IMG/VR virus record: IMGVR_UViG_3300028393_000019
Span: 201,681-265,680 of that record
Strand: one strand, 5' to 3'
DNA length: 64,000 nt
The translations under genes were made by a program, and so were the position numbers. Of the stretch, positions 1-33,855 are shown piece after piece; positions within the stretch are counted from its first letter, which is position 1; every line of letters starts with the position of its first letter. Below the pieces are notes generated by a model, which was given only the letters and a program-made list of their open reading frames with translations, had not been told where the DNA came from and ran no database searches.

Positions 1-231
1 TCTGGATACCTTAATTTAGTTTCTAGTTTATTGGGATATAAAACAGGATGCTGTATTAGCTTTAAACATTCTGAATTAAAAGAAGCATTAAACTTAGAAG
101 GTGAACCATTACTTATTATGGGTGTAGGATTTAAAGATCCCGAAGTAAATCGTCGCTTACATCAAACTGACCACGATATAGTGTTCCCAACAAACCCAAG
201 GCAAGAGGTTCCGGTTGTTGAGTACAAATAA
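1..231 (+). CDS. Nitroreductase-family protein, C-terminal part (5' truncated by window)
   Basis: Frame is open from base 1: SGYLNLVSSLLGYKTGCCISF...PLLIMGVGF, which resembles the nitroreductase C-terminal pattern. Confidence 0.55.
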   Translation, partial: SGYLNLVSSLLGYKTGCCISFKHSELKEALNLEGEPLLIMGVGFKDPEVNRRLHQTDHDIVFPTNPRQEVPVVEYK

Positions 232-799
232 GTCTTATCACTCTCTAAATTTAAAAAACTGGGATAAGATAAAACAAAGATACTCGTCATACATTGCAGA
301 CGACATAACCGGTCAAGAGCTCATTATTTTTCAACAAGGTAATGAGGAACTTGACTGGTTAGAAGACAACATACTAGAAGATATCTGTAACTACACAGGT
401 AAAGAACATAAAATAAAATTTGCCGCGCTTGGCGGCCTATGTGCTAACAATACTCTCAAAGAGCATATAGATGGTTTTTACCCTCCTCGACTAGGTTCGT
501 CAAAATGGTCATTAAACATACCAATTAAAAATTACGACAATTTTGAAATGCTCTGGTATGATGGTGACTATGAACATCAAGAAAGAACAGACCCCCCTGA
601 TTTAACTTCACCGTTAAAAGCAGATGAAATGCAGGTTATTAGGCCAAAATGGATTGGTGCCAAAAATCTTAAAGATTCCAGACTCATTAAAGGACCAACG
701 ATTGTCCAAATAAATATCCCACACGTAGTACACAACTATAGCGATAGCACAAGGGTAGTACTTGCTGTAAGGTTTACACCCGACGTAGAAATAAAATGA
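215..799 (+). CDS. Hypothetical protein, possibly cupin/dioxygenase-like
   Basis: 194-aa ORF with TTG start (uncertain); C-terminal QINIPHVVHNYSDSTRVVLAVRF looks like a double-stranded beta-helix end. Confidence 0.45.
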   Translation: MLSTNKSYHSLNLKNWDKIKQRYSSYIADDITGQELIIFQQGNEELDWLEDNILEDICNYTGKEHKIKFAALGGLCANNTLKEHIDGFYPPRLGSSKWSLNIPIKNYDNFEMLWYDGDYEHQERTDPPDLTSPLKADEMQVIRPKWIGAKNLKDSRLIKGPTIVQINIPHVVHNYSDSTRVVLAVRFTPDVEIK

Positions 800-1560
800 A
801 AACACTTTGGATATTTGGAGATTCTTTTAGCACTAGTAGAGACCCTGACGAACATGTTGCTTGGTCTAATCTTCTTTCCAACAAATTAAACGCACAAGTT
901 AAAATCATAGCCGAAGGTGGTAGCTCTATTGGATGGTTAATGTATCAATCATTTTTAATGAAAGATCAATTTAAAAAAGATGATTATGTTATCTTTCAAA
1001 CGTCGACGCTAGTTAGAGCGTTCCTTAATAAAAATAAACCAGGAATGACAGAGTTTTGGAAAGATTGTCCTTATTGGAACTCCTTGAGCAAAAGAGAAAA
1101 AGACGGGTATGCCTTTCATGTGACAAATATTCACGATGAAGAAATATTGCAACAACAAATACAGCTCTGGATATGGGGGATGGCACACTACACCTCTCAT
1201 TTAATTACTAAGCCTGTATTATCTAGAGGATGGGATATTGGCCCGTTAGAAGTGCCGGAAGACTGGACATTAAGCCAAGGATTCTTATTAGATGCTAGCC
1301 TTGACGAATTTGATAAATCAAGAGATGAAAGCATAGACTGGATGTTGCGTGTAGGAGGTGATCCAAGGAACAATCACCTTAGCGAGGTCAATCATTACAT
1401 ACTTGCAGAAATGTATTATGATGCGCTGGTAAACAACTCTGTTCCAGATTTTAAAAAATTAAAAACAAAACTGTACAAGACATATTCTGAATTAGGAAAT
1501 GAAAATCAAATACGTAATGATATAGAAGATGAAAGTTTTGGTAAACGTTGGATAGCATGA
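796..1560 (+). CDS. SGNH/GDSL-like hydrolase-fold protein
   Basis: N-terminal LWIFGDSFS block I and C-terminal NHLSEVNH block V-like motif. Confidence 0.55.
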   Translation: MKTLWIFGDSFSTSRDPDEHVAWSNLLSNKLNAQVKIIAEGGSSIGWLMYQSFLMKDQFKKDDYVIFQTSTLVRAFLNKNKPGMTEFWKDCPYWNSLSKREKDGYAFHVTNIHDEEILQQQIQLWIWGMAHYTSHLITKPVLSRGWDIGPLEVPEDWTLSQGFLLDASLDEFDKSRDESIDWMLRVGGDPRNNHLSEVNHYILAEMYYDALVNNSVPDFKKLKTKLYKTYSELGNENQIRNDIEDESFGKRWIA

Positions 1561-2264
1561 TAAAATACATTGGAAATTTTAAAGACTGGATCAAACCCGA
1601 GTGGATTGAGGAAGTCATGTCCAAACCGGGGTTTGATATGCCTAAACACGGTCTTAGAAATGAAGCAAGATTTAATCCAATACTATTTGACTACCTAGGC
1701 GGAGATGTAACTCGAGTACACACTAAAGAAGAATACTTGCAATTTGTCAAAGAACTGTCAGAGATGGATGAAATTGATCCTGTTGTAAAACATGCTAGAA
1801 CACACGTTGCATATTTAGATCCAGACTTTCCAGTCGATGATGAATATAACATGTATAGAAATTCAGGATACGACATATGGGGTGTGTATTTTAGATTGCT
1901 AGAAAAATTTGATGTTAGTTTTGATATACTAAAAGATCCACCACCATTCTTAGATTATAAAGACAAACACATAACATGGTGGTTTAGTAAAATGAATCCT
2001 GGACAACGTATGCCAGTCCACGTTGATAGAGCTAAGCCGGAAATAGAGATACACAAGTACTGGATGCCGTGGACCGATTACCAGCCCGGGCATATTTTTA
2101 CCATAGGTGATAAAGTTATAACTGACTACAAACAAGGTGATGTATATGAATTTGACTATGCTGGCGAATGGCATGGAGCATGCAACATAGGTCATACACC
2201 GAGAGTTGTGTTACAAATAACTGACTACAAACCATCGAGAAATATAAATGAAACTTCTAGCTAA
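1557..2264 (+). CDS. 2OG-Fe(II)/Asp-Asn beta-hydroxylase-like dioxygenase, paralog 1
   Basis: PVHVD...HGACNIGHTPRVVLQIT (HxD...H triad); ATG at 1557 overlaps the upstream stop. Confidence 0.7.
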   Translation: MIKYIGNFKDWIKPEWIEEVMSKPGFDMPKHGLRNEARFNPILFDYLGGDVTRVHTKEEYLQFVKELSEMDEIDPVVKHARTHVAYLDPDFPVDDEYNMYRNSGYDIWGVYFRLLEKFDVSFDILKDPPPFLDYKDKHITWWFSKMNPGQRMPVHVDRAKPEIEIHKYWMPWTDYQPGHIFTIGDKVITDYKQGDVYEFDYAGEWHGACNIGHTPRVVLQITDYKPSRNINETSS

Positions 2265-2787
2265 TTATAAAGATTGGATTAAGCCTAAGTGGGTTGAGGA
2301 AGCCCTTGCATTAGATGGCTATAAAGTCCCACACGATTTTTTTAAAGATAATAAACTTACGCTTGAAGAACAAGCAGGATTGCGAGAAGCAATGGATCCT
2401 TCAGAACGTGAGATATATGATGTGTACGGTACTGATGGAGTGTTTTTTCATTTGCTTGAAAGCAGTTTGTTTAGCTTCGAAGTTGATCAACCACCATGGA
2501 TTGCGCCCAGTGAAACATTCTGTTGGGAAGTAATAAAAATGCACACTGGAGAATTTATTCCAGTACACAGAGATATACTAAAACATCAAGATCCTAACTC
2601 AAAAAGATTTTGGGTTCCAATGCTAGATTGGAAGGAAGGACATATTTTTATGTACGAAGACCTTTATGTACATAACTATAAAGCAGGTGATGTGTTTTTG
2701 TATGACGACCCTCGAGCATTACACAGCGCAATTAATATTGGAGCAGATATTAGGTTAATTATGCAAGTAACAACTTACAAGGAATGA
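2248..2787 (+). CDS. 2OG-Fe(II)/Asp-Asn beta-hydroxylase-like dioxygenase, paralog 2
   Basis: PVHRD...HSAINIGADIRLIMQVT. Confidence 0.7.
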   Translation: MKLLANYKDWIKPKWVEEALALDGYKVPHDFFKDNKLTLEEQAGLREAMDPSEREIYDVYGTDGVFFHLLESSLFSFEVDQPPWIAPSETFCWEVIKMHTGEFIPVHRDILKHQDPNSKRFWVPMLDWKEGHIFMYEDLYVHNYKAGDVFLYDDPRALHSAINIGADIRLIMQVTTYKE

Positions 2788-3308
2788 TCATGGAGTATGT
2801 GGGAAATTTAAAAGACTTGATAGATACAAGTTGGGTGGAACCTTTATTAAAAGAAGTGTTAGGTAAGACTGGAATCTTAAGACCTAAAGAGGGAGGTAAA
2901 CCTGACGGAGCAGAAGGCAATGCAGAATGGCAGAAAGCTATTGATGCTGGGTACAGTCCCGATGCTGTGTATTTCCAAATGTTTAATCAATCTAATCTAA
3001 CTACAGAAATACCCGAGTTTCATACTTGCGGAAGAGCAAGGCACTGGTGGATTACAAAAATGATGCCAGGGGATTTTATGCCCATGCACATTGACCCGCA
3101 TACTAAACAAGAAAAAAATGTAGATCGTTTTTGGATTCCATTACAAGATTGGGAACAAGGACATATTTTTATGTACGAGGACGATGTTGTGACTAACTAT
3201 AAAGCAGGTGACGTTTACAAGTATTCGTCTGCACAAGCATTACATGGTGCGGCAAACATAGGACTAGTTCCTAGATTAGTTTTGCAAGTAACCCTTTACG
3301 AGGAATAA
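2784..3308 (+). CDS. 2OG-Fe(II)/Asp-Asn beta-hydroxylase-like dioxygenase, paralog 3
   Basis: PMHID...HGAANIGLVPRLVLQVT. Confidence 0.7.
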   Translation: MIMEYVGNLKDLIDTSWVEPLLKEVLGKTGILRPKEGGKPDGAEGNAEWQKAIDAGYSPDAVYFQMFNQSNLTTEIPEFHTCGRARHWWITKMMPGDFMPMHIDPHTKQEKNVDRFWIPLQDWEQGHIFMYEDDVVTNYKAGDVYKYSSAQALHGAANIGLVPRLVLQVTLYEE

Positions 3309-3310
3309 AA

Positions 3311-3865
3311 ATGGAATTTATAGGAAACTACAAAGAATGGTTGAAGCCAGAGTGGGTTGAATATGTTCTAAATAATGATGGCTATGAAATGCCTAAATGG
3401 GAGTTTGAACAGAACGGAATACTTGAAGCCATCGAGCGAGGTGATCGCGCAGAGTTTTGTGAGTTTCAAAAGAAGTATGAAGAAGTAGGATTCAAACACA
3501 ATTCTCTACTTTACTATTTGTTTGAGGAAGATAATTTTCCGTTTGAAGTGCCCTTGCCCCCTTTTATAAATTTAAAAGAAGGGCAAGGATATTATTGGAA
3601 TTTATTTAAATACAAACCAGGAAACTTACTACCAGTGCATAGTGACCGAGTAACTAAGTTTGAAAAAAATTGTAAACGTTACTGGATGAGTTGGCTTGAC
3701 TGGCAGGACGGCCATATTTTAATTTACGAAAATCAAATGATTGCACCGTATAAGGCTGCTGATACTTACATCTTTACTAATCCATTCGGAACACACGGCG
3801 CCGCTAACATTGGCTTAACACCAAGAATATCATTTCAGATTACTATCTACGATGAGCAACATTAA
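3311..3865 (+). CDS. 2OG-Fe(II)/Asp-Asn beta-hydroxylase-like dioxygenase, paralog 4
   Basis: PVHSD...HGAANIGLTPRISFQIT. Confidence 0.7.
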   Translation: MEFIGNYKEWLKPEWVEYVLNNDGYEMPKWEFEQNGILEAIERGDRAEFCEFQKKYEEVGFKHNSLLYYLFEEDNFPFEVPLPPFINLKEGQGYYWNLFKYKPGNLLPVHSDRVTKFEKNCKRYWMSWLDWQDGHILIYENQMIAPYKAADTYIFTNPFGTHGAANIGLTPRISFQITIYDEQH

Positions 3866-4643
3866 AAGAATAGTAGCGTTTGGATGCAGTTACACTGCCG
3901 GAGAAGAGTTGTTATACCATCAACTTGGAGACCTCGACGAATATAGAAAAAGTACATCACACAATCCCCGATTATTTTTTCAAAAACTATCAAAGGATCC
4001 TGTTGCACAAGAAACTTTGAAAACCATACGATCTGATCAATTGAAATTAGCATGGCCGGCAAAACTTGCCGCATTATTGAATATTGACTATGTCAACTTT
4101 GCAGAAGCTGGCAACAGTATGGATAAAATACTATGGCAAGTAGAACAGAAGAAATTAGAAAAATTCTTCCAACTCGGAGATGTAATATTTGTAGGTGCCA
4201 CTAATCCTGATAGGAATATATTCTTTAAGGACACTGGTCCTATGTCGTTTCAATTACCATCATTACATTGGGCGTCTGAAGAATCGCTAATAGGTGTTGA
4301 TAGTGTCGGCAACATCGATGTTGTTATAAGCAAAAATGCAGATAAAGAGTTACTCAACTGGTTTACTGATGATCGAATTGTTTGGGATTATCTTAAATCG
4401 TTAAGGTCGTTAGCATCTCTGGGTGCTGCCATTGTAAATGCTATGTCGTGCGATATAAATTTAAATGTGCAATCATATAATGTTGAACTATTTAAAAACA
4501 TAAAAGATAGCATACAATATCTTCAAAGTAATGATATGGATTCGTTCGCAGGAAAAGATGATTACTTGGCATGGGGTCACCCTAATGAGCAAGTGCATCA
4601 ACGATTTGCGGAAAGCATATATGAAATACTGCGGAAATTATAA
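3852..4643 (+). CDS. SGNH/GDSL-like hydrolase-fold protein
   Basis: IVAFGCSYTAG at the N-terminus; WGHPNEQVHQRFA at the C-terminus. Confidence 0.55.
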   Translation: MSNIKRIVAFGCSYTAGEELLYHQLGDLDEYRKSTSHNPRLFFQKLSKDPVAQETLKTIRSDQLKLAWPAKLAALLNIDYVNFAEAGNSMDKILWQVEQKKLEKFFQLGDVIFVGATNPDRNIFFKDTGPMSFQLPSLHWASEESLIGVDSVGNIDVVISKNADKELLNWFTDDRIVWDYLKSLRSLASLGAAIVNAMSCDINLNVQSYNVELFKNIKDSIQYLQSNDMDSFAGKDDYLAWGHPNEQVHQRFAESIYEILRKL

Positions 4644-5175
4644 ACACTTAATCAATCCAGAATGGATAGAGTTATTGTTATCAACAAAAGGTATCCCTAT
4701 CAGCCCTTGGAAAGATCATAAAGTAGACGAGGTTAAAGAAGAAATTGATTTTGATCAATTGTTGACATCTACACAAGATGAACGAGATTTGTTTGTGACT
4801 GGACCGTATGGGGAAAGTCTCATCATGGCTGAGATGTTCACTGAAGAGAATATACCGTTTGTACTAGATTTCAAAGAAGTTCAACATCTATTTGCAGGTG
4901 ACTGGTGGATCATAAAACAACTGCCAGGGCAGTATATGCCGATACATAGAGATACTGCATTATTCTACCAAGAAAATAATAGAATATGGATGCCGCTTAT
5001 AGACTATCAACAAGGTCACATTTTTATTCATGAAGGTAATTTTATAAAAGATTACAAGGCCGGTGACATGTTTAAATATTTCAAAGATAACGATTTGCAT
5101 GGTAGTATAAATTTAAGCTCGACCCCCAGAATTGTTTTGCAAATAAGCCAGAAACCTATACCATATGATCGTTAA
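4621..5175 (+). CDS. 2OG-Fe(II)/Asp-Asn beta-hydroxylase-like dioxygenase, paralog 5
   Basis: Start moved to ATG 4621 (MKYCGNYKHLINPEWIE matches the paralog N-termini); PIHRD...HGSINLSSTPRIVLQIS. Confidence 0.7.
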   Translation: MKYCGNYKHLINPEWIELLLSTKGIPISPWKDHKVDEVKEEIDFDQLLTSTQDERDLFVTGPYGESLIMAEMFTEENIPFVLDFKEVQHLFAGDWWIIKQLPGQYMPIHRDTALFYQENNRIWMPLIDYQQGHIFIHEGNFIKDYKAGDMFKYFKDNDLHGSINLSSTPRIVLQISQKPIPYDR

Positions 5176-5674
5176 TAATTTAAAAGTTGCTATAACAGGG
5201 CATACCGGAGAGGTAGGTTCTGCGTTATCTAAAGTGTTTACCGATGCTGGACATAGTATAGTCGGCATATCAAGATCTACTGGGTTTGATTTAAACAACA
5301 ATGAAAACTACAAAGATATTATTTCCACAATTGATCAATGCGATGTGTTTATCAATTGTTGTCAAATAGGTCAAGATGCACTACTACGGAATGTTTGGAA
5401 TTTATGGCAGGGCTGTGAATACAAACGGATTATCAACATCAGTGCAATCAGCGCATCTGACCCTGCTGAGAATAAAGAGTATTATCAAAATAAAAGAAAC
5501 TTAGAATCAACGTTCTGGGAATTACTTAAAATAAATCAGTTCCCACCTATGACTATCGTTAGAGCAGGCCTAAGAGAACATGACCCTAGTTACGATAACT
5601 GGGCAAAGTTCTTAATGAAATTGCTAAATGAACCTGAATATCATTTTTTAGAAGTGAGTTATTTTAAATTATGA
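5165..5674 (+). CDS. Short-chain dehydrogenase/reductase (Rossmann fold), short form
   Basis: VAITGHTGEVGSAL glycine motif, DVFINC, IINISA, YxxxK (YYQNK). Confidence 0.65.
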   Translation: MIVNNLKVAITGHTGEVGSALSKVFTDAGHSIVGISRSTGFDLNNNENYKDIISTIDQCDVFINCCQIGQDALLRNVWNLWQGCEYKRIINISAISASDPAENKEYYQNKRNLESTFWELLKINQFPPMTIVRAGLREHDPSYDNWAKFLMKLLNEPEYHFLEVSYFKL

Positions 5675-6456
5675 TTACTAATTTAAAACTTATACTCGAA
5701 AATAAATGTGCAACATTTGAAAGTTGGACCAATACGTTTGACAATTTTATAAACCATCAACCGAGAGATTCCGATAGTGTACTAGAAAAATATAAAAATT
5801 CTCCTGATTTCTGTACTTGGGAAATAGACGAAGACATTACAACTATTAGCTATCGTTATGTACATAGATTATGCAGTAATGGGGACATGCATTGTTTACA
5901 ATCATACACTGAAGAAAAATATCAATCGTTAATAAATTACAAAACATTAGGTCTAGAACTTCCTATTTTAGAAATAATGTCTGTTGAGAATGATTTGTTG
6001 TATACAAAATTTACCAGCCCCACTGGGGACTTAGGATATCCACCACCCTATGTGTTATTGAACATAATGTATAACAGCAGTAATGTTATAGAGGAATTCC
6101 GTAACTATATTACTGTTATAATTGATAATTATATAGAATTAACTAAGAAATGTATACAACACAATATACCATTTTTTAGCCCGGCTCGGACTATGACTAG
6201 CCATTACTTTGATAATATGTTTTATTTTAAAGATACTGTATTCTTTTCTAGCAACAAAGAGCTAACGGTTGAAGATATAGCAGATATCATTAGTAGTAAC
6301 ATTGACGGGTTTAGAAGAGCAAAAGGAATAATATCAGCATATCAAGGCAGAGCTGATTCACATCCGGATACTGTTGATTTGATTTATAAAGAAATAGAAA
6401 ATCTAAAAAGTTATGCGAGGACGCAATGTCTAAATTTAAAGAATGTAACTCTGTAA
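5671..6456 (+). CDS. Hypothetical protein
   Basis: 261-aa ORF coupled to its neighbours; no motif recognised. Confidence 0.6.
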   Translation: MITNLKLILENKCATFESWTNTFDNFINHQPRDSDSVLEKYKNSPDFCTWEIDEDITTISYRYVHRLCSNGDMHCLQSYTEEKYQSLINYKTLGLELPILEIMSVENDLLYTKFTSPTGDLGYPPPYVLLNIMYNSSNVIEEFRNYITVIIDNYIELTKKCIQHNIPFFSPARTMTSHYFDNMFYFKDTVFFSSNKELTVEDIADIISSNIDGFRRAKGIISAYQGRADSHPDTVDLIYKEIENLKSYARTQCLNLKNVTL

Positions 6457-6626
6457 TAGCACACTACAAACACAATAAAAAATACATAGAGCTTGTTACT
6501 AGCCTATATGTATTTTCTGAAGCACAATCTACAGGGTCACCTACCCATTACGATGCAACTACTTGGCAATGGGGTGACAAAACTATTTTAATTCAAGAAG
6601 TAGGAATTCATCCTGAGATTGAATAA
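6426..6626 (+). CDS. Small hypothetical protein
   Basis: 66-aa ORF filling the gap between genes. Confidence 0.35.
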   Translation: MSKFKECNSVIAHYKHNKKYIELVTSLYVFSEAQSTGSPTHYDATTWQWGDKTILIQEVGIHPEIE

Positions 6627-7598: not shown

Positions 7599-7606
7599 TA
7601 TTTATA
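7599..7606 (-). promoter_or_regulatory. T4-type late promoter TATAAATA
   Basis: TATTTATA on the + strand, upstream of the minus-strand gene starting at 7579. Confidence 0.6.
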
Positions 7607-9781: not shown

Positions 9782-10187
9782 ATGGATATCTAGAATTTCA
9801 ACACCTAAGGAAGAACTAGGTGGAATGAGTGTGTGTCCTTATGCTAAAAGTGCAGAGTATGAATTAATCGAAACTGACGGTAGTGATATAAATCCCCCAC
9901 CCTGGGACTTTGAACTTATTGTATATAAACTACCCGATAGTTATTCTATAGAAGAGCTCAACGATATAGCAGTAGAATACAATAACTTATTTCCGGAGAT
10001 GGTGTTTTTGCCCGATCATAAAGATAAAGCAACATTTATAAACGGCATTCCTACTAACAACGGTGTATATAATCTTATGCTATGTCAATGGCGTGATAAT
10101 TTATCAAAGGCTCGAGAAAAATTATCTAATACTGCCTATTATACCTACTGGGCAGAAGACTATTTGAAAGAAATATTAAACACATGA
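9771..10187 (+). CDS. Conserved phage hypothetical protein
   Basis: 138 aa, LGGMSVCPYAK motif; coupled to both neighbours. Confidence 0.55.
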   Translation: MLNEWISRISTPKEELGGMSVCPYAKSAEYELIETDGSDINPPPWDFELIVYKLPDSYSIEELNDIAVEYNNLFPEMVFLPDHKDKATFINGIPTNNGVYNLMLCQWRDNLSKAREKLSNTAYYTYWAEDYLKEILNT

Positions 10188-11188: not shown

Positions 11189-12296
11189 AATATTCTGTAT
11201 CAGCAATCAAAGGCAGTACTAACATAAGGTTATCCTGCCCATTATTCCATACTCCTATATGCAAACCGTTGTCATAGAATGTTTGTTCAGGAGTTGACTT
11301 AATATCTATATCAAACATTAATCCGTAGTTTCTAAAAGTTAACCCCATACTAGTAAAAAGTCTGGTCGCAGTATCGACAGTTGCAGTGTATTGATTTAAT
11401 AAATCTTCTGTTTCTAATATTTCTAAATATTTTAAAGTTGAATAAATTCCACTTAATGAAAATGTATAGGTGAACCCGTGTCCCAAAAACTCATGCTTTA
11501 CTACTTCGTTAACACGATCGCTTACTAGCGTAGCACTTAAAGGAAAGTATCCCCCAGTCAATGCCTTGCCCATGGTAAAAATATCAGGATCCAACTCAGT
11601 ATCGAATCCAACAAACTTACCTGTCTTGCCACCACACATGGCAATATCATCTAAAATAAAAATCACATCGTGATCTCTGCATGTTTGTCTAAGTTCTCGC
11701 CAAAAATCTTTAGTATACTGTTTAAGACCCTTATTCCACGAGCATGTTTCCATAACTAGGCAACAGGCTGTTTTAGTTTTAACAGCGTCTATTAATTCTT
11801 CTTGATTCAAAGCAATACAATTTTCAACAGGATGTTTGGTCATATACTCTAATTGGCCGATGCCGGATGTTAGGTAAGTACTTCCGTGGTAAGAATTTTT
11901 AACACCGAGTATAGTGTGCCTAGGGTTACCTTTAGCTTCGTGATATATTTTGGCTAATTTAATTGCACCCTCGACTGCGTCACTTCCACTTAGGGCAAAT
12001 ATACTTCTATAACCACCAGTGATATCATATAGTTTATTTGTTAGATCTATAACTGCCTGATTAGTGGTCATGTATTCGCCGCCAGCGAATGGATTGTCTA
12101 ACATTTTATCAGCAACATAGTGTATAATGTCTTTACGATCAAATCCTAGTAAAAAACAGCCGCAGGATCCTAGACTTAAATCTATTAAATCTTTGCCGTT
12201 TTCTACAAATCCAAATCTTGTATAATTATCAATCTTTCTTGCGTTAGAATGATCGTAGTTGTAGTTAAAAGGGAACAAGAGCTTTAAATTTTTCAT
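11142..12296 (-). CDS. PLP-dependent class III aminotransferase
   Basis: LSGSDAVEGAIKLA, SYHGST, FILDDIAMCGGKTG, PDIFTMGKALTGGYFPLSA (PLP lysine). Confidence 0.85.
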   Translation of the reverse strand: MKNLKLLFPFNYNYDHSNARKIDNYTRFGFVENGKDLIDLSLGSCGCFLLGFDRKDIIHYVADKMLDNPFAGGEYMTTNQAVIDLTNKLYDITGGYRSIFALSGSDAVEGAIKLAKIYHEAKGNPRHTILGVKNSYHGSTYLTSGIGQLEYMTKHPVENCIALNQEELIDAVKTKTACCLVMETCSWNKGLKQYTKDFWRELRQTCRDHDVIFILDDIAMCGGKTGKFVGFDTELDPDIFTMGKALTGGYFPLSATLVSDRVNEVVKHEFLGHGFTYTFSLSGIYSTLKYLEILETEDLLNQYTATVDTATRLFTSMGLTFRNYGLMFDIDIKSTPEQTFYDNGLHIGVWNNGQDNLMLVLPLIADTEYFTKLQERLAASLHVD

Positions 12297-12300
12297 ACAG

Positions 12301-12318: not shown

Positions 12319-12325
12319 TGGTGTC

Positions 12326-14242
12326 ATGAAAAATGTCTATCTTATACAAACTGAAATTACTTCCGGACCCTCTAATGAGCACTACCTACCATTCAGTGTA
12401 GGATGTATTTGGGCCTATGCAAACCAATTTGATTATGTGAAAAATAACTATAAATTGCAAGATGTTATTTGGCGGAGAGATAGACAAAAAAATGTAATTG
12501 AAAAGATCATCGACCCTAGTATCATTGGATTTAGTTGCTACGTATGGAATCATAAATGGAATCTAACCTTAGCTAAGAAATTAAAAGAACGTTTTCCAAA
12601 CTGTCTAATAGTGTTTGGTGGTCCTAGTGTTAATGAAGAATGGCTCAAATACGATTTTATCGATGTTGCAATGTTTGGCGAGGGAGAAGTTGCATGGGCT
12701 AATCTTTTAAAGATGAATCTTAATAACGAGACTATTCCGAGATATTGGAATAACCCGAGACAAACAGATATTGAAAATTATCCTAGCCCTTACACTACAG
12801 GGTTCTTTGATAAAATTATTGCAGACAATCCAGATATTAGTTGGTTTATGATGCTAGAAACTAACAGAGGATGTCCTTATCACTGTACGTTTTGCGGCTG
12901 GGGAGCCGACTATCTTAACAAACTAAAAAACTTTAACCTACATAGGGTTGAGGAAGAAATCAAATGGGCTATAACACATAACATACATTGGATGTTTGTG
13001 ATCGATGCTAACTCAGGTATAATGAAAGAACGTGATGTCGAAGTAGCGTGGATGATCCGCAGAGCTATAGAAGCACCCAACAGCAAAATTAGACGTGTAA
13101 CCTTTAACCATGCTAAAAATTTAAATGAGCATTGTTTTGAAATGGAAAAGATTATTCAAGCATGGACTTACGGTTTAGAAATGGCTATACAAAGCATGCA
13201 CCAGCCCACACTAGATGCTGTGAAAAGAATTAACATGGGTATGAACAATTTAGAACGTGCTTATGCCTTATGCCGTAAACACGGTATTAGATACTACACA
13301 GAGATGGTTTTAGGTTTACCTTTAGAAACCAAGGACACTTATATTAATGGCCTAATGAGATTAATGGAATTAGGACAACACGACAGCGTTAAAACTTATC
13401 CTGCTACTGTTATTCCTAATAGTGAAATGGACAGTGAAGAGTATAGAAACAAATACGGAATTAAGTTGATATATCCTAAAGATATGTATCGTAGTCCCGA
13501 AGAACGCATATGGGACGACGAAGATAGTAGTCATGAAAATATTGCCATGGTGTCGAGCACAAATACTGCTACCAGCCAAGATATTGCAGATTCATTAGCG
13601 TACAGTTGGATGATGAGTCAATTTCATTATTTAGGAATAACACAACTTACTTCACGGTACTTGTATGAAATGCATAATGTTCCATACCGTCAATATTATG
13701 ATGCATTATACAACGCAATTAAGAACGACATTATAGGCGGTCCTATACTAAATGATGTAGAAGAAATATTTGTAAATTATTTCACTTACGGTGAAATGCC
13801 TGTAGGTGAAAAATGGAAGAACGTAGTTGCATTGACTATGCCCGAAAGTTACGGTATGGACGATATATTTGAAAACAAGAATCATTTTATAGACCTCGGA
13901 GTTACCGTTGGAAACTTATTTCATACTATAGATCCAAGTGTCATAGAATTACAGTATGCTTTTATGTTGGATGAAAGCAAATCATATCCATTCATTCTAG
14001 AATCAGATATAGATATTGATAGATGGGAACGTTTATCATGCTCATATTCGGTTAATAGGCGTTACATGGTTAGTCACATGCATGACCAAATGTATCAAAA
14101 ATATTTGCTTAAAACTGATATTGCAAATATTAATAATCCTTATGTTGAAACCGACATAGAAGATTCATATAAAGGCAATAAGATCTCAGTCATTCCTATT
14201 TTACCTATACCTACAACTACCGCTAGTGGGAGAGTTATGTAA
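12326..14242 (+). CDS. Cobalamin-binding radical SAM enzyme
   Basis: N-terminal B12-binding domain (YLPFSVG, IIGFSCYVWN, VFGGP, GEGE) followed by ETNRGCPYHCTFC. Confidence 0.85.
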   Translation: MKNVYLIQTEITSGPSNEHYLPFSVGCIWAYANQFDYVKNNYKLQDVIWRRDRQKNVIEKIIDPSIIGFSCYVWNHKWNLTLAKKLKERFPNCLIVFGGPSVNEEWLKYDFIDVAMFGEGEVAWANLLKMNLNNETIPRYWNNPRQTDIENYPSPYTTGFFDKIIADNPDISWFMMLETNRGCPYHCTFCGWGADYLNKLKNFNLHRVEEEIKWAITHNIHWMFVIDANSGIMKERDVEVAWMIRRAIEAPNSKIRRVTFNHAKNLNEHCFEMEKIIQAWTYGLEMAIQSMHQPTLDAVKRINMGMNNLERAYALCRKHGIRYYTEMVLGLPLETKDTYINGLMRLMELGQHDSVKTYPATVIPNSEMDSEEYRNKYGIKLIYPKDMYRSPEERIWDDEDSSHENIAMVSSTNTATSQDIADSLAYSWMMSQFHYLGITQLTSRYLYEMHNVPYRQYYDALYNAIKNDIIGGPILNDVEEIFVNYFTYGEMPVGEKWKNVVALTMPESYGMDDIFENKNHFIDLGVTVGNLFHTIDPSVIELQYAFMLDESKSYPFILESDIDIDRWERLSCSYSVNRRYMVSHMHDQMYQKYLLKTDIANINNPYVETDIEDSYKGNKISVIPILPIPTTTASGRVM

Positions 14243-15402
14243 TGTTAATGGGCTTTAATCAAACTAACATAGACCGATTACTAGCAAGTATAAATGGTAC
14301 AGTTTTAGATCCAACAGTAAGCCTATGCCATCATTGCCATAGACATATACCAGCATGGCGCTACCATAAAGATAATCAGGTGTTTATAGCCAAGTCATGT
14401 CCCATACATGGTATTAGCCATCATATGATCGAATCTGACTATGAGTTTTATGCTAATCTATATTACACCCAGGATAATCCAGATTTTAATTTTAATGGCG
14501 GAGTACTTATCGAAGGTAGTGACCGCTGTAATTTAGAATGCCCACATTGTTACCATTTACCAGAAAACGATGCCCGCGACCCTTCTATAGAAGAATTGCT
14601 CGATCAAATACGAGATATGCCGGTAGGCGAGGATGGAGTACATAGAATCATCCTCGCCGGTGCTGAAAGTACCTTACGCAAAGACTTTCCAGAATTGATA
14701 ACAGCTATCCGTGAGTTAGATCCCGAAATGGATGTTAGTGTAATGACTAATGGCATACGTTTCAATGACAGCGATTTTATTCATAAATGTGTTGAAGCTG
14801 GACTTGCAGGTGTTAACATTGGGCTTAATCATCCAAGTTACATCGATCACGAAACTGTAAGACGTAAACAAGTTAGTGCTATTGAAAACATGCACCGTGA
14901 AGATATCAAGATAGGTTACATTAGTTATACTATGGTAGACTTCAGTGAGCTTGATTACATACTAACTGAGATTACTAGTAATCCTTGGACTCCTAAAAAT
15001 TTCCGCATACGTAATGGTGCAGAAATAGGACGTAATGCCAGCACCGAACAACCGTTTGTTAGCAACTTATACAAACGTGCGGAGCAATGGTGCAAGGATC
15101 ATAGTAAACAGTTTGAACGAATCATAGAAGCAGACAATAATATCTATCATGTTATGGTTAAGATTGAAGATAAAATTGTGCGATTAATCAGCTGGTGCGA
15201 TGAAACCAATATTGATATGGAAGAATTGCGTAGCGGACCTTGGTGTAACTTTGTACCCGACGGTATTACAAACTTCTTACATCAGATTATACGCAGAGAT
15301 GTGTTTAAAAATAAAGGACTAGCCTTACCGGATAGCCCTCCTAGTCGATATAAATTTAATCGCACACCCGATAAGTCAAAACTTAATTTGCTAAATCTAT
15401 AA
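14242..15402 (+). CDS. Radical SAM enzyme with N-terminal rubredoxin-like module (Tes/GDGT-MAS/MJ0619-like)
   Basis: SLCHHC..HIPA...KSCPIHG, then DRCNLECPHCY, AGAESTLRKDFPELI, TNGI, EAGL. Confidence 0.75.
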   Translation: MLMGFNQTNIDRLLASINGTVLDPTVSLCHHCHRHIPAWRYHKDNQVFIAKSCPIHGISHHMIESDYEFYANLYYTQDNPDFNFNGGVLIEGSDRCNLECPHCYHLPENDARDPSIEELLDQIRDMPVGEDGVHRIILAGAESTLRKDFPELITAIRELDPEMDVSVMTNGIRFNDSDFIHKCVEAGLAGVNIGLNHPSYIDHETVRRKQVSAIENMHREDIKIGYISYTMVDFSELDYILTEITSNPWTPKNFRIRNGAEIGRNASTEQPFVSNLYKRAEQWCKDHSKQFERIIEADNNIYHVMVKIEDKIVRLISWCDETNIDMEELRSGPWCNFVPDGITNFLHQIIRRDVFKNKGLALPDSPPSRYKFNRTPDKSKLNLLNL

Positions 15403-15739
15403 AGCCATTTGACCTATCAAGGAATTTAGTTTTAATATTTAAAATATTAAACTTATTCAAAACTTTAACAACATCTGGTACATTAAATTTTTTACAACTA
15501 TAAACATCTAGTTGTATTAGACCAGTATCCCAAGTGTGCATGACAATATGACTAGTAGTTATAGCCATGAGTGCTGTGTATCCTTCGTTATCTAAAACTT
15601 CTGATCTATAGACATATGGCCCTCCTAGTATTTCCATGTCAATAGTTGATACAATATCTAGTAGAATGTTTTTAACATCTAATTCAGACAATTGTGTTTC
15701 AGCAGTACCTTGTATTAATAGGTGCAAATGATCTAACAC
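15383..15739 (-). CDS. speD: Pyruvoyl-dependent S-adenosylmethionine decarboxylase-family proenzyme
   Basis: HLHLLI...GYTALMAITTSHIVMHTWD...QLDVYSCKKF; GTG start. Confidence 0.75.
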   Translation of the reverse strand: MLDHLHLLIQGTAETQLSELDVKNILLDIVSTIDMEILGGPYVYRSEVLDNEGYTALMAITTSHIVMHTWDTGLIQLDVYSCKKFNVPDVVKVLNKFNILNIKTKFLDRSNGFIDLAN

Positions 15740-16333
15740 TTAAGGCTTCCTTCCTATGATCATGTAACGTGTGTACAGGGGTAATTTCATTTCGCCGCCC
15801 CAAAGAAAATGTAATCCACAAGTTTCCTTAAATTCATCAAATGATTTATGCCACCGCACATGCTCGGGGATATTATAATCATTACTTTGGATAATAATCA
15901 AACTACCGTTAGGCATTCTATCCAACCATTTATCGTATTGTGCTTGTGTTAAGTGTTCACAGCTAGTATTAATAATAATATCTGCAACAGAAATTACATC
16001 GCACATATCTGCCGTATACGCTTTGAACCGACCTTCAATTTCTTCACCCTTGTTCATTAGCGTAGCAATAGGTTCGCAGGTTGGATCAATGTCAATACTG
16101 CGAATAGTAGTAATGGGAATGTTGCTCTGAAATAACATGCTGGCAAGTGTACCAACCCAGCCGCCGAAGATGTCTATGCTAGATGCAAAATGCACATGCT
16201 CATCTAGACAATCAATCAACCATTCTTTGCTTTTTAATTGCCCCGACCAAAAGGCATCCATAGTACGCATAGGGTCCGGGCTTTGACGGATGGCCTGCAT
16301 CCAATGGTGTAAATGGTTTGTATCTATCTGCAT
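15740..16333 (-). CDS. Class I SAM-dependent methyltransferase-like protein
   Basis: IDIFGGWVG, SIDIDP, ADMC, IINTSCEH. Confidence 0.65.
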   Translation of the reverse strand: MQIDTNHLHHWMQAIRQSPDPMRTMDAFWSGQLKSKEWLIDCLDEHVHFASSIDIFGGWVGTLASMLFQSNIPITTIRSIDIDPTCEPIATLMNKGEEIEGRFKAYTADMCDVISVADIIINTSCEHLTQAQYDKWLDRMPNGSLIIIQSNDYNIPEHVRWHKSFDEFKETCGLHFLWGGEMKLPLYTRYMIIGRKP

Positions 16334-17280
16334 TTTGGTATCTTGCTGTCCGCACTACTAACACATCTAGTAGTCACGCATTTTTGTGGCACAGAAAACA
16401 AAGTAAATTTTTCTATCGTGCCCAGTGCGGCTTCGTGGCAACTGTAAGCACGTTTGACTTCCGTACCTTTTATTATAACACTCTGATAACCTGCATTACA
16501 AGTCCAATTGGCAAATTGATTAAACCCCAGTGCATTAAACCGTTCTGCTTGATCTATAAAATAATTTTTATCACCATCCATTAAACGGATTTGATAACCT
16601 TCCTGCTGTTCAAAATCGTTTTGCATTATATCAACCATCTCAGCTGTGTAGCCTTCCACTATGGCGGTGGCACTGTCATTGCTTTGTGGTTTAAGTGTTA
16701 CATTAATTCCACGAGCTCGAAATCGTTCACAGCGTTCTAGTGTTTCAAAGAACAGTTCTGGCACCATAACTTGATTAACAGTTACATGAACCCGCTCGTT
16801 CATTAACTGTAAACACTTGTCACCGAACTCGTGCTCCTTGGCGAACTCTGCATGAAAGCTGGCTGTAATACTGCGGCGCTGTAGACAATCAGTGATGCTA
16901 CACCAGTTTTTCCACCAGCTGGGTCCCGGACTCAAATTGGTAGTCATATGTATACTTTGGTAGGGACTTTCTAATTCATCTATATGTTTGATCAATTCGG
17001 GCAACTGTTTGTACGCAGTAGGTTCACCTCCTGAGAAGCTCCAGTGAAATTGGGTGAATCCGTTCAAACGAGCTTGACGTTTTATCTCGTCGACTGTAGT
17101 CTTATAGACTTCTAAACTTTGGTAATCCAAATTGTCGCTTCGGGCATAGGGCCAACAATAGCTACATTTGTAATTACAAAATCTACCTAGGATCCAACTT
17201 ATGTTAAATAATGGGCGATCCAACATTGTTTGTTGCCCAAAATGCGTTATGTCTTTGAAAGGAATGATTGCGAAGTTCAT
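16324..17280 (-). CDS. Radical SAM protein
   Basis: LGRFCNYKCSYCWP (CxxxCxxC), FSGGEPT; Cys-rich C-terminus. Confidence 0.85.
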   Translation of the reverse strand: MNFAIIPFKDITHFGQQTMLDRPLFNISWILGRFCNYKCSYCWPYARSDNLDYQSLEVYKTTVDEIKRQARLNGFTQFHWSFSGGEPTAYKQLPELIKHIDELESPYQSIHMTTNLSPGPSWWKNWCSITDCLQRRSITASFHAEFAKEHEFGDKCLQLMNERVHVTVNQVMVPELFFETLERCERFRARGINVTLKPQSNDSATAIVEGYTAEMVDIMQNDFEQQEGYQIRLMDGDKNYFIDQAERFNALGFNQFANWTCNAGYQSVIIKGTEVKRAYSCHEAALGTIEKFTLFSVPQKCVTTRCVSSADSKIPKCR

Positions 17281-33850: not shown

Positions 33851-33855
33851 TTTCC

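What the first reader, a model, noticed from the sequence alone, without database searches (positions are those of the whole stretch)
1..17280. 17-kb natural-product-like tailoring island in a phage
Seen: nitroreductase-like, six 2OG-Fe(II)-type oxygenases, two SGNH proteins, SDR, flavin halogenase, amidinotransferase, PLP aminotransferase, three radical SAM enzymes, AdoMetDC and a methyltransferase are packed with overlapping stops and starts, several behind late-type promoter cores. No scaffold-building enzyme (NRPS, PKS, obvious RiPP precursor) is visible. Inference: the substrate is a phage-made macromolecule (virion protein, glycan or DNA base) or a host metabolite. Late timing favours post-translational decoration of the virion.
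Basis: inference. Interest (0 to 1): 0.65.

Follow-up and report, generated by a model that had tools for sequence, protein, structure and literature searches.

The report
Phage oxygenase/radical-SAM/halogenase tailoring island
The first 17 kb of the window are the right-hand half of a 34-kb island in an uncultured jumbo phage, packed with hydroxylases, radical-SAM enzymes, a halogenase and an amidinotransferase; relatives keep the gene order, but what it chemically modifies is still unknown.

Summary
The observation largely holds. Window 1-17,280 carries 23 tightly packed genes, and each enzyme class was checked. There are five tandem paralogues of a Fe/2OG-oxygenase family found here only in viral sequence, plus two probable distant ones. 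There are also a flavin halogenase, a StrB1-like amidinotransferase, a class-III aminotransferase, three radical-SAM enzymes, an AdoMetDC-fold decarboxylase, a class-I methyltransferase, a short SDR and a nitroreductase tail. The two SGNH calls rest on motifs only.

It is a low-GC block of about 34 kb (window -16,300 to 17,280) in a 265-kb PA5oct-like jumbo myovirus contig. It holds 8 radical-SAM genes and at least 12 cupin-type oxygenases. A second island elsewhere in the genome has four more halogenases.

Gene order is conserved in many uncultured viral contigs. Part of the toolkit also occurs in Bdellovibrionota chromosomes. No scaffold-building enzyme or widely conserved precursor peptide was found. 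A fibre-related gene sits inside the island at the same place in at least five lineages. A T4-late-like motif heads one operon.

Best reading (about 0.35): late-expressed tailoring of a ready-made substrate, most likely fibre proteins. Small-molecule or glycan/lipid products remain serious rivals. Phage dioxygenase/halogenase arrays were described in 2010, so this is a new variant of a known kind.

The parts
1..231 (+). 3' end of a nitroreductase-family (FMN) gene that starts at window -467. An ATAAATAC late-like motif lies 13 nt before its start.
   Evidence: PF00881 2.3e-7 on the full ORF; motif; conserved upstream in 3 of 5 relatives
215..799 (+). Probable cupin/DSBH oxygenase (family 20), distant from the others
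   Evidence: No Pfam or PHROG hit. hhalign probability 63% to the AspH-like family and 36% to the main cupin family. HxD...H read by eye.
796..1560 (+). SGNH-like protein (N-terminal FGDSFS); motif-level call only
   Evidence: Sequence; no family hit; present in 6 related loci
1548..2264 (+). Fe/2OG-oxygenase-fold paralogue 1 (family seen only in viral sequence)
   Evidence: weak PF05118 hit
2248..2787 (+). Fe/2OG-oxygenase-fold paralogue 2
2784..3308 (+). Fe/2OG-oxygenase-fold paralogue 3 (the one modelled)
   Evidence: AF2 pLDDT 94.7. VIA-align top 50 all Fe/2OG oxygenases, Z 9-12.7 over residues 1-174. H102, D104 and H154 invariant in 60 sequences.
3311..3865 (+). Fe/2OG-oxygenase-fold paralogue 4
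   Evidence: 21 metagenomic homologues, none named. No tblastn hit in 50,697 GenBank phages.
3852..4643 (+). SGNH-like protein (FGCSYT...GNS...H), family 16
   Evidence: Invariant S13, G87, S89 and H243 in 14 sequences. PDB profile search not significant. hhalign 97.5% to the upstream 285-aa family 31.
4531..5175 (+). Fe/2OG-oxygenase-fold paralogue 5 (true start probably near 4621)
5165..5674 (+). Short SDR/epimerase-like Rossmann protein (TGxxGxxG, YxxxK). The family is in 45 related viral loci and 9 bacterial loci.
   Evidence: PF01370 26.8 bits against a cut-off of 20.9
5671..6456 (+). 261-aa protein of unknown fold (family 22)
   Evidence: No hits; conserved in 15 loci
6426..6626 (+). 66-aa conserved small ORF (STG...D.T.W.W...VGIHP). 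In relatives it lies directly before the halogenase.
   Evidence: only 3 sequence variants, conserved along the whole length; complex test gave no verdict
6608..7579 (-). 323-aa fibre-related protein, on the opposite strand, with TATAAATA at 7599-7606(-) 20 nt upstream
   Evidence: 39% identity over 114 aa to the C-terminal part of the 690-aa Mtd_N protein at the island's left edge. Same position in at least 5 lineages. Absent in L009-L011.
7620..9188 (+). Flavin-dependent halogenase (Trp_halogenase family), one of five in the genome
   Evidence: PrnA 2e-56, RebH, VirX1 9e-53
9161..9781 (+). Probable 2OG oxygenase (HxD...H...R by eye), family 34
   Evidence: hhalign only 21%; in 10 loci
9771..10187 (+). 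138-aa unknown protein (family 18), always between the halogenase/oxygenase and the amidinotransferase
10184..11188 (+). Amidinotransferase (GME superfamily, StrB1/HsvA/SxtG/AGAT type; His and Cys in GGIHCLT invariant)
11142..12296 (-). Class-III PLP aminotransferase
   Evidence: PF00202 2e-44; all NCBIfam hits below their cut-offs
12326..14242 (+). B12-binding radical-SAM enzyme, probably a C-methyltransferase (KedN5-like)
14242..15402 (+). Radical-SAM enzyme with an HMPTM-type N-terminal zinc ribbon (nearest models TrsS and Tes, below their cut-offs)
15383..15739 (-). AdoMetDC-fold pyruvoyl decarboxylase; substrate could be AdoMet, ornithine or arginine
   Evidence: PMC10407285
15740..16333 (-). 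Class-I SAM-dependent methyltransferase fold
16324..17280 (-). Radical-SAM enzyme (about 310 aa; three paralogues of this family in the island)
17280..17308 (+). Perfect sigma-70 consensus promoter (TTGACA-17-TATAAT). It marks the right border, where GC rises to 0.42.

Best explanation
Window 1-17,280 is the right-hand half of a low-GC island of about 34 kb and about 42 genes, in an uncultured PA5oct-like jumbo myovirus. The island is a conserved, largely virus-specific tailoring toolkit.

It contains:
- at least 12 Fe/2OG (cupin/AspH-like) oxygenases;
- 8 radical-SAM enzymes;
- a flavin halogenase, a methyltransferase and a sulfotransferase-like protein;
- SGNH-like proteins;
- a block of halogenase, amidinotransferase, aminotransferase and B12 radical-SAM enzyme.

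It contains no enzyme that builds a scaffold.

My best reading is that it is expressed with the late genes and decorates a substrate made elsewhere. The most likely substrates are the phage's own fibre proteins: the fibre-related protein encoded inside the island, the Mtd_N fibre at its edge, and possibly the giant fibre family. The chemistry would be hydroxylation, radical-SAM C-H chemistry, methylation, halogenation and possibly sulfation.

The amidinotransferase/aminotransferase/decarboxylase genes may form a separate small-molecule sub-module, for example one making a guanidino or polyamine-like compound.

What is shown: enzyme folds and motifs, conserved synteny, and the promoter-like motif. 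What is inferred: the substrate, the timing, and every chemical step.
For: - Enzyme identities.
- Extent of the island from GC content.
- Conserved order in diverged relatives: L009-L011, L024 and L043 keep the block, and L171/L172 keep the whole 17 kb. The cupin family is found in 119 stretches / 76 IMG/VR loci.
- No NRPS-type adenylation enzyme or GT2; the only GT1 is more than 18 kb away; no widely conserved small ORF.
- The fibre-related gene is embedded at the same place in at least 5 lineages. An Mtd_N fibre gene with an adjacent sulfotransferase-like gene sits at the left edge. The second halogenase/oxygenase island abuts giant fibre genes and Gly_rich_2 proteins.
- The ATAAATAC motif precedes the tail sheath, structural proteins, the fibre gene, the island-1 halogenase and the nitroreductase operon head, and it recurs at operon heads in relatives.
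- The structural neighbours of the cupin include many protein prolyl, lysyl and aspartyl hydroxylases. PF05118 hits on island ORFs: two upstream genes at 1.1e-9 and 1.7e-4, and a below-threshold hit on window 1548-2264.
- Precedent: beta-hydroxylase plus sulfotransferase operons were predicted to modify tail-collar fibre proteins and collagen-like proteins (PMC2938197).
Against: - No direct evidence for any substrate.
- Amidinotransferases of the StrB1/AGAT type, class-III aminotransferases, SDRs, Kdo/APH-like kinases and PP-loop ATPases are known for small-molecule, sugar or RNA substrates, not for protein side chains.
- The fibre-related gene is absent from some relatives that keep the enzymes (L009-L011).
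- The fibre assignment itself rests on partial paralogy to an Mtd_N protein.
- The late-promoter assignment is by analogy with T4. Only one operon head in the window region carries the motif, and none precedes the halogenase block.
- The same motif also precedes the ribonucleotide reductase gene, which is not a typical late gene.
- Bdellovibrionota chromosomes carry the radical-SAM part of the toolkit, and no fibre gene was noticed beside it.
Confidence: 0.35

Rival explanations
1. The island makes or tailors a free small molecule: an amino-acid-, polyamine- or aminocyclitol-derived metabolite that is aminated, guanidinylated, C-methylated, hydroxylated and halogenated. The scaffold would come from host primary metabolism, and the product would act as an antibiotic, a signal or a metabolic effector during infection.
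For: - StrB1-like amidinotransferase at 8.6e-88; HsvA and SxtG are the next-best matches.
- Class-III aminotransferase, AdoMetDC-fold decarboxylase, SDR and B12 radical-SAM methylase.
- Kinase-like family 3, by Atlas features at 0.96 to Kdo/APH/RIO clusters.
- The block halogenase - f18 - amidinotransferase - aminotransferase - B12 rSAM - rSAM is kept as a unit in diverged phages.
- All solved relatives of the halogenase act on free Trp or small aromatic compounds.
- Published predictions for cyanophage clusters read them this way (PMC7824862, PMC12801897).
Against: - Twelve or more oxygenases, eight radical-SAM enzymes and, genome-wide, five halogenases are far more tailoring steps than one small scaffold needs.
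- No transporter, resistance gene or scaffold enzyme was found.
- The late-like promoter motif and the embedded fibre gene are not explained.
Confidence: 0.3
2. The island remodels a glycan or lipid: nucleotide-sugar or polysaccharide units, LPS core / lipid A, or membrane lipids of the host or on the virion. The purpose could be to block superinfection or to glycosylate the particle.
For: - In Bdellovibrio sp. HCB2-146, N-twitch radical-SAM genes and the amidinotransferase homologue sit beside a UDP-glucose dehydrogenase, an NAD epimerase and a DegT aminotransferase. Another array sits beside AsnB.
- The upstream half of the island has a FA_desaturase-family and a sulfotransferase-like gene. 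The AspH family also includes the lipid A hydroxylase LpxO (my own knowledge).
- Kinase-like family 3 resembles Kdo/WaaP kinases.
- The cupin's structural neighbours include the sugar oxidases EvdMO1, AviO1 and HygX, and KanJ.
- Tes/TrsS-like and ladderane-type radical-SAM hits.
- The window also holds a separate cluster with three NDP-sugar epimerases and a TPP enzyme at 30-40 kb.
Against: - No glycosyltransferase in the island, and only one GT1 in 265 kb.
- Sugar-type genes lie near only 6 of 52 bacterial arrays, about what I would roughly expect by chance (no control was run).
- All the lipid and sugar family hits are below their curated cut-offs.
Confidence: 0.2
3. The island is not one pathway. 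It is a hypervariable storage region of independent auxiliary genes, like the oxygenase-rich islands of cyanophages, each acting on a different host target.
For: - Low GC and mosaic content: genes come and go between relatives. The halogenase is in 11 loci, AdoMetDC in 1, and the fibre gene in 12 of 80 loci (79 related loci plus this genome).
- There is a second, differently composed island in the same genome.
Against: - A core of families co-occurs in 40-69 of 80 loci (79 related loci plus this genome), with conserved order and translational coupling.
- A subset of the families also travels together in bacterial chromosomes.
Confidence: 0.1
4. The island hypermodifies phage DNA or RNA bases.
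For: - Phages often devote multi-gene clusters to DNA hypermodification (my own knowledge).
- A PP-loop protein with a QueC-like layout (SGGxDS plus a C-terminal CxxCxxC) and small radical-SAM enzymes with weak QueE hits.
- AlkB-type enzymes are among the cupin's structural neighbours.
Against: - No TGT/DpdA and no QueC family match in the contig.
- No base-hydroxymethylase or DNA glycosyl/aminoacyl transferase was seen in the island.
- The contig is only 72% complete, so absence is not proof.
Confidence: 0.05

Closest known systems
Tandem dioxygenase + tryptophan-halogenase gene arrays of cyanophages (Syn9 gp49-gp58 region; Iyer, Abhiman, de Souza & Aravind 2010, PMC2938197) and the S-SSM6a 10-gene halogenase/2OGFeDO/cupin cluster (Iyer et al. 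2021, PMC7824862)
   Same: Phage-borne. Many tandem Fe/2OG oxygenases of several families sit with Trp-halogenase-type enzymes, there is no scaffold enzyme, and the substrate is unknown. That work proposes the same two readings: peptide/protein or polysaccharide decoration, or a secondary metabolite.
   Different: The host phage is a PA5oct-like jumbo myovirus, not a T4-like cyanophage. The main cupin family has no tblastn match in 50,697 GenBank phages. The island adds 8 radical-SAM enzymes, an amidinotransferase, a class-III aminotransferase and a B12 radical-SAM enzyme. It lacks the carbamoyltransferases, HemK-like methylase and HAD phosphatases of the S-SSM6a cluster.
VirX1, the cyanophage Syn10 flavin-dependent halogenase (PDB 6QGM)
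   Same: Same Pfam family. The catalytic Lys and Glu are conserved, and it is virus-encoded.
   Different: No closer to VirX1 (9e-53) than to PrnA or RebH (2e-56). The WxWxIP motif is degenerate (WRFKIG) in the window copy. Substrate and halide preference are untested.
Beta-hydroxylase + sulfotransferase operons with tail-collar fibre or collagen-like proteins (predicted in PMC2938197)
   Same: AspH-family oxygenases and a sulfotransferase-like gene lie next to fibre-type proteins. That proposal has the fibre as the substrate.
   Different: It is only a bioinformatic proposal. Here the sulfotransferase hit is below the Pfam cut-off (18.8 against 22 bits), and the fibre proteins are of another type (Mtd_N).
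Aminoglycoside/aminocyclitol tailoring logic (StrB1 amidinotransferase, BtrN twitch radical-SAM dehydrogenase, GenK B12 radical-SAM methylase, GenB class-III aminotransferases, KanJ 2OG oxygenase; from my own knowledge)
   Same: The same enzyme classes co-occur. StrB1 is the best solved match of the amidinotransferase.
   Different: No cyclitol synthase and no glycosyltransferases. The N-twitch radical-SAM proteins are no closer to BtrN than to the peptide maturases SkfB and CteB.
NCBIfam NF033640 'twitch domain-containing radical SAM protein' arrays in Bdellovibrionota chromosomes
   Same: The two upstream island genes score 334 and 378 bits against a cut-off of 170. The bacterial arrays co-occur with homologues of island families f2, f5, f6, f9, f13, f15 and f17.
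   Different: The bacterial arrays lack the cupin family and the halogenase. I found no paper that addresses them.
Marine T4-like environmental viral genome TARA_ERS488813_N000010 with 12 radical-SAM genes (Nishimura et al. 2017, PMC5332604)
   Same: An uncultured large phage with an unexplained multiplicity of radical-SAM genes.
   Different: It was only counted in that paper. No sequence comparison was made here.

Membership tests
Fe(II)/2-oxoglutarate-dependent oxygenases (DSBH fold) | Double-stranded beta-helix fold | tested here: met
   AF2 model pLDDT 94.7. VIA-align top 50 are all Fe/2OG oxygenases, Z 9-12.7, aligned over residues 1-174. Foldseek gives cupins and 2OG oxygenases.
Fe(II)/2-oxoglutarate-dependent oxygenases (DSBH fold) | HxD/E...H iron-binding facial triad | tested here: met
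   H102, D104 and H154 invariant in 60 sequences that are 14-65% identical to the modelled paralogue
Fe(II)/2-oxoglutarate-dependent oxygenases (DSBH fold) | Basic residue that binds the C5 carboxylate of 2OG | tested here: inconclusive
   The Arg (PR motif) is invariant in the 5 window paralogues but not in the 60-sequence set
Fe(II)/2-oxoglutarate-dependent oxygenases (DSBH fold) | 2OG-dependent oxidation activity | not testable with these tools
   Needs an enzyme assay
Flavin-dependent (Trp-type) halogenases | GxGxxG FAD motif, catalytic Lys (PrnA K79) and Glu (E346) | tested here: met
   GGGTAGW, and invariant K72 and E350/E353 in all five genome copies; PF04820 3e-93
Flavin-dependent (Trp-type) halogenases | WxWxIP motif | tested here: not met
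   The window copy reads GWRFKIG. Two of the four other copies keep WxWxIP. It is still a family member by profile score; the meaning of the deviation is unknown.
Amidinotransferases (AGAT/StrB1, GME superfamily) | Full-length similarity and the Cys-His-Asp catalytic residues | tested here: met
   Profile against 1BWD at 8.6e-88 over positions 2-358. H314, C315, H189 and D191 are invariant.
Radical SAM superfamily | CxxxCxxC cluster motif and radical-SAM core | tested here: met
   CPYHCTFC, CNLECPHC and CNYKCSYC; PF04055 hits
AdoMet decarboxylase (class 1b SpeD) | Pyruvoyl-forming Ser plus His and Cys (T. maritima S63, H68, C83) | tested here: met
   TTSHIVMH...YSC is present; residues as listed in PMC10407285
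AdoMet decarboxylase (class 1b SpeD) | Specificity for AdoMet rather than Orn or Arg | not testable with these tools
   Phage SpeD homologues can be ornithine or arginine decarboxylases (PMC10407285). TIGR03330 scores 34.8 against a cut-off of 75.65.
SGNH/GDSL hydrolases | Ser (block I), Gly, Asn and His (block V) in an SGNH fold | tested here: inconclusive
   Motif-compatible invariants S13, G87, S89 and H243, but no significant Pfam, PHROG or PDB match. The fold was not predicted.
RiPP biosynthetic gene cluster | A precursor peptide gene next to the maturases | tested here: not met
   Across 80 loci (79 related plus this genome), the only recurrent small ORF is the 66-aa protein. It is in 11 loci, has 3 variants, and is conserved over its whole length with no leader/core pattern.
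NRPS/PKS-type natural-product cluster | A scaffold-building megasynthase or adenylating enzyme | tested here: not met
   No PF00501 match in the 265-kb contig; no such ORF in the island
7-deazaguanine DNA modification system | DpdA/TGT transglycosylase and QueC | tested here: not met
   No PF01702 or PF06508 match. The contig is 72% complete.

The most novel reading that the evidence does not exclude
Jumbo phages of this group and predatory Bdellovibrionota share a dedicated, so far undescribed enzymatic toolkit: arrays of N-twitch radical-SAM enzymes with SDR, PLP, PP-loop, methyltransferase and amidinotransferase partners. The phages have expanded it with a virus-specific Fe/2OG oxygenase family and halogenases. 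The toolkit would install a dense, combinatorial set of post-translational modifications (hydroxyl, methyl, halogen, guanidino, sulfate) on adhesion fibres, giving a chemical rather than a genetic way of diversifying or protecting receptor-binding proteins.
Probability: 0.12. Interest if true: 0.9.

Novelty: new variant of a known kind. Interest (0 to 1): 0.6.

Why it matters
Phage genomes with tandem dioxygenases and halogenases have been known since 2010, yet no substrate has been identified for any of them.

This island offers a well-delimited test case for that open question. It is conserved in at least 76 uncultured viral loci and is the richest of its kind seen here: 8 radical-SAM enzymes, at least 12 oxygenases, a halogenase and an amidinotransferase. 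It also has three concrete handles:
- a candidate substrate encoded inside it, the fibre-related protein;
- a late-like promoter motif;
- a cellular counterpart in Bdellovibrionota that can be cultured.

If the target is a virion fibre, it would be, to my knowledge, the first case of heavy enzymatic decoration of phage receptor-binding proteins. If the target is a small molecule, it would be a phage-encoded halogenated, guanidinylated metabolite pathway.

Either way, it supplies new enzyme families: a cupin family found only in viral sequence, N-terminal-twitch radical-SAM enzymes, and a halogenase with a deviant WxWxIP motif.

Tried and rejected
- megablast of the island and of 24 kb of the rest of the window against GenBank phages: no match.
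- PHROGs on ten island ORFs: only the SDR hit.
- Pattern scan of GTDB genomes for the cupin family: 25 pattern matches, none a relative.
- PDB profile searches: nothing significant for the 5-sequence cupin profile (AtsK at E 0.8), the methyltransferase-like family, the SGNH-like family, the PP-loop family, the PLP-like family or f18.
- Exact TATAAATA as the late promoter: 3 copies in the window against 5.9 expected. It was replaced by the empirically enriched ATAAATA(C).
- Sigma-70-like sites inside the island: no more than chance, 76 against 74.
- RiPP reading: no widely conserved small ORF.
- Aminopropyltransferase reading of the methyltransferase-fold protein next to AdoMetDC: no spermidine synthase among the top 50 structural matches. 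Not excluded.
- 7-deazaguanine reading: no TGT or QueC.
- Glycan context of the bacterial radical-SAM arrays: 6 of 52 loci, no enrichment.
- Complex prediction of the halogenase with the 66-aa protein: no verdict, score 0.00. This is not evidence either way.
- Literature searches on twitch-domain sugar enzymes and on Bdellovibrio radical-SAM arrays found nothing relevant.

Full report
**Where the window lies.** The window is the last 64 kb (positions 201,681-265,680, plus strand) of a 265,680-bp IMG/VR viral contig that CheckV rates 72% complete. The contig encodes a 1,172-aa tail sheath, a large terminase, ribonucleotide reductase and a DNA ligase. Its terminase is closest to the Pseudomonas jumbo phage PA5oct (52% identity), followed by Sinorhizobium phage Phosso and the CBB/Rak2-like phages. 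No GenBank phage matches at the DNA level. It is therefore an uncultured jumbo myovirus. The host is unknown.

**Checking the observation.**
- Window 1-17,280 holds 23 ORFs with almost no intergenic space and many overlapping stop/start pairs.
- Family scans confirm the flavin halogenase (PF04820, 3e-93), the class-III aminotransferase (2e-44), three radical-SAM enzymes, the AdoMet_dc fold and an N-terminal epimerase/SDR Rossmann domain.
- All three radical-SAM proteins keep CxxxCxxC.
- The first, truncated ORF is the tail of a nitroreductase-family gene that begins 467 nt before the window.
- The 334-aa ORF at 10184-11188 has no Pfam hit. A 13-sequence profile of its family matches the inosamine-phosphate amidinotransferase StrB1 at 8.6e-88, then HsvA, SxtG and glycine amidinotransferase, with the catalytic His/Cys invariant.
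- The 197-aa ORF next to the decarboxylase folds with pLDDT 94 into a class-I SAM methyltransferase. The top 50 structural matches are all methyltransferases, Z 14.8-16.8, and none is a spermidine synthase.

**The oxygenases.**
- Five ORFs (1548-2264, 2248-2787, 2784-3308, 3311-3865, 4531-5175) are paralogues, 35-40% identical to the first of them; a sixth copy lies upstream of the window.
- Pfam barely sees them. In a 60-sequence alignment of diverged members, the only invariant residues are H102, D104, H154 and N158.
- The AlphaFold model (pLDDT 94.7) aligns over its full length to Fe/2OG oxygenases only. These include PiuC, proline 3-hydroxylase, PHD/P4H, EvdMO1/AviO1, AlkB and AspH, at Z 9-12.7.
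- ORFs 215-799 and 9161-9781 show HxD...H by eye and weak profile-profile links to the AspH-like families.

**Weaker points.**
- The two 'SGNH' proteins have a GDS- or GCS-type N-terminal motif and compatible invariant residues, but no significant match anywhere. This call stays at motif level.
- The AdoMetDC-fold protein keeps the Ser/His/Cys needed for pyruvoyl formation. However, phage SpeD homologues are known to have become ornithine or arginine decarboxylases (PMC10407285).

- GC content is 0.35-0.39 from contig position about 185.4 kb to 219.0 kb, against 0.42-0.45 around it.
- The window therefore holds only the right-hand half of an island of about 34 kb and about 42 genes.
- The upstream half encodes five more radical-SAM enzymes. 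Two of them are full members of NCBIfam NF033640, 'twitch domain-containing radical SAM', at 334 and 378 bits against a cut-off of 170.
- It also encodes two AspH-family oxygenases and further cupins detected by hhalign.
- Other upstream genes are a fatty-acid-desaturase-family protein, a sulfotransferase-like protein and a kinase-like protein (Atlas features 0.96 to Kdo/APH/RIO clusters).
- By motif only, there is also a PP-loop ATPase and a PLP-like protein.
- The left edge is a 690-aa protein with an Mtd_N tail-fibre domain. The right edge is a perfect sigma-70 consensus promoter at 17280-17308.
- Eight of the contig's nine radical-SAM genes lie in this island.
- A second low-GC island (contig 29-48 kb) holds four more halogenases and at least eight further 2OG oxygenases. 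It lies directly after two giant fibre genes and three Gly_rich_2 proteins.

- On the minus strand, 6608-7579 encodes a 323-aa protein whose N-terminal part is 39% identical to the C-terminal region of the 690-aa Mtd_N protein.
- It is preceded by TATAAATA, 20 nt upstream.
- It sits at the same place and in the same orientation in at least five diverged lineages, but it is absent from others.

**Is it one unit?**
- Homologues of the cupin exist only as unnamed metagenomic proteins. There is none in 50,697 GenBank phages, and a pattern scan of 185,579 prokaryote species genomes found none.
- IMG/VR holds 119 matching stretches in 76 loci.
- I clustered all ORFs of 80 loci (79 related loci plus this genome). 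The cupins co-occur with N-twitch radical-SAM (69 loci), 310-aa radical-SAM (60), kinase-like (56), a 268-aa probable cupin (55), 360-aa radical-SAM (47), SDR (45) and others.
- The block cupins - halogenase - f18 - amidinotransferase - aminotransferase - B12 radical-SAM - HMPTM radical-SAM recurs in order in relatives whose proteins are only 55-65% identical.
- A closer relative, from two other samples, keeps the whole 17-kb order.
- The genes are therefore linked in relatives.

**Scaffold and precursor.**
- No AMP-binding enzyme and no GT2 are present in the contig. The single GT1 lies more than 18 kb outside the island.
- The only recurrent small ORF is the 66-aa protein at 6426-6626. It has three sequence variants, is conserved over its whole length, and shows no leader/core pattern.
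- A complex prediction of this protein with the halogenase gave no verdict.
- No TGT/DpdA or QueC is present.

**Timing.**
- Exact TATAAATA is not enriched in the window.
- An unbiased count of 8-mers in 97 upstream regions gave ATAAATAC as the one strongly enriched word (37-fold). Fifteen of its 17 genome copies lie 4-50 nt before a start codon.
- Those starts include the tail sheath, a virion structural protein, the Mtd_N fibre, the first halogenase of island 1, and the nitroreductase gene that opens the plus-strand operon running into the window.
- In the island, the 7-mer ATAAATA occurs upstream of genes at window -18425, -486, 710 and 7599(-).
- Relatives carry it before the nitroreductase orthologue (3 of 5 distinct upstream regions) and before the first cupin of several arrays.
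- By analogy with T4 this looks like the late promoter, but that is an inference. The motif also precedes the ribonucleotide reductase gene, which is not a typical late gene. No motif precedes the halogenase-amidinotransferase block.

**A cellular counterpart.**
- The N-twitch radical-SAM family is concentrated in Bdellovibrionota among cellular genomes. It also occurs in a 1.27-Mb Parcubacteria contig.
- There it forms tandem arrays of 2-9 copies, accompanied by homologues of island families f2, f5, f6 (SDR), f9 (PP-loop), f13 (PLP-like), f15 (amidinotransferase) and f17 (methyltransferase).
- In one Bdellovibrio isolate the array sits among nucleotide-sugar genes, but this is not general: 6 of 52 loci.
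- I found no paper on these arrays.

**Interpretation.**
- The island is a conserved tailoring toolkit without a scaffold-builder.
- For fibre proteins as the substrate: the late-like motif at operon heads, the embedded and flanking fibre genes, the AspH-type and prolyl-hydroxylase-like oxygenases, and the sheer number of paralogous modifiers. This fits the 2010 prediction that beta-hydroxylase/sulfotransferase operons modify tail-collar and collagen-like proteins (PMC2938197).
- Against it: the amidinotransferase, class-III aminotransferase, decarboxylase, SDR, kinase-like and PP-loop proteins belong to families that act on small molecules, sugars or RNA. The fibre gene is also dispensable in some relatives.
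- I therefore rate late decoration of a ready-made macromolecule, most likely fibres, at about 0.35. I allow for a separate small-molecule sub-module.
- I rate a free metabolite at 0.3, glycan/lipid remodelling at 0.2, an unlinked gene collection at 0.1, and nucleic-acid modification at 0.05.

**Novelty.**
- Tandem dioxygenase/halogenase arrays in cyanophages were described in 2010 and again in 2021.
- A cyanophage halogenase, VirX1, has a solved structure.
- A phage with amidinotransferase plus radical-SAM 'antibiotic' genes, and a T4-like genome with 12 radical-SAM genes, have also been noted.
- What seems new here is the combination and its scale: a PA5oct-like jumbo phage lineage, the cupin family found only in viral sequence, the conserved embedded fibre gene, and the shared toolkit with Bdellovibrionota.
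- I class it as a new variant of a known kind.

Noticed in passing
window 48546-61796 (+), and contig positions 21-28235, 81638-93881, 130890-132860: A family of 12 paralogous fibre-like proteins, including giants of 4,416, 3,701, 2,925 and 2,305 aa. They are Thr/Ser/Gly/Ala/Asn-rich. The N-terminus of the window copy looks to me like the N-terminal domain of the 690-aa Mtd_N protein (not tested).
   Followed up: partly
window 30253-40246: A second low-GC cluster: a radical-SAM gene (31080-32441, paralogous to the N-twitch genes of the island), two paralogous unknown proteins of about 460 aa, a TPP-dependent E1-like protein (34398-35027) and three tandem NDP-sugar epimerase/dehydratase paralogues (36360-39267). 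It looks like a modified or branched sugar pathway.
   Followed up: partly
contig 29-48 kb (L007), outside the window: A second tailoring island with four Trp-halogenase paralogues (26-29% identical to the window copy), 2OG-FeII_Oxy_5 x4, 2OG-FeII_Oxy_3 x2, DUF6445 x2 and three Gly_rich_2 proteins. It lies directly downstream of two giant fibre genes. An ATAAATAC motif lies 24 nt before the first halogenase.
   Followed up: partly
whole contig; in the window at 43788 (+), 7599 (-) and 710 (+): ATAAATAC(T) is the only strongly enriched upstream 8-mer. 15 of its 17 copies lie 4-50 nt before a start codon, including the tail sheath and structural genes. It is a candidate late promoter of this phage group, similar to T4 TATAAATA.
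   Followed up: partly
window 17280-17308 and 19370-19398 (+): Sigma-70 consensus promoters scoring 12/12 and 11/12 lie directly after the island, ahead of small plus-strand ORFs. They look like early, host-polymerase-driven genes.
   Followed up: no
L092-L170 (GTDB genomes), e.g. L100 and L094: Tandem arrays of up to 7-9 N-terminal-twitch radical-SAM paralogues (NF033640) occur in Bdellovibrionota chromosomes and in a 1.27-Mb Parcubacteria contig. I found no paper about them.
   Followed up: partly
L092, L093, L095, L118, L121, L125: Contigs binned into Crocinitomicaceae and Pseudobdellovibrionaceae MAGs carry island-type genes at 43-57% identity. L092 even carries the viral cupin. They may be mis-binned phage fragments or a hint about the host.
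   Followed up: no
window 41500-45264: Two divergently arranged virion structural proteins (phrog_6002). Next to them are a phrog_11903 protein (40304-41503) and an endonuclease (46067-47092).
   Followed up: no
contig 161.9-169.7 kb: Another slightly low-GC stretch, holding the contig's only GT1 glycosyltransferase (166606-167607) and two paralogous unknown proteins.
   Followed up: no
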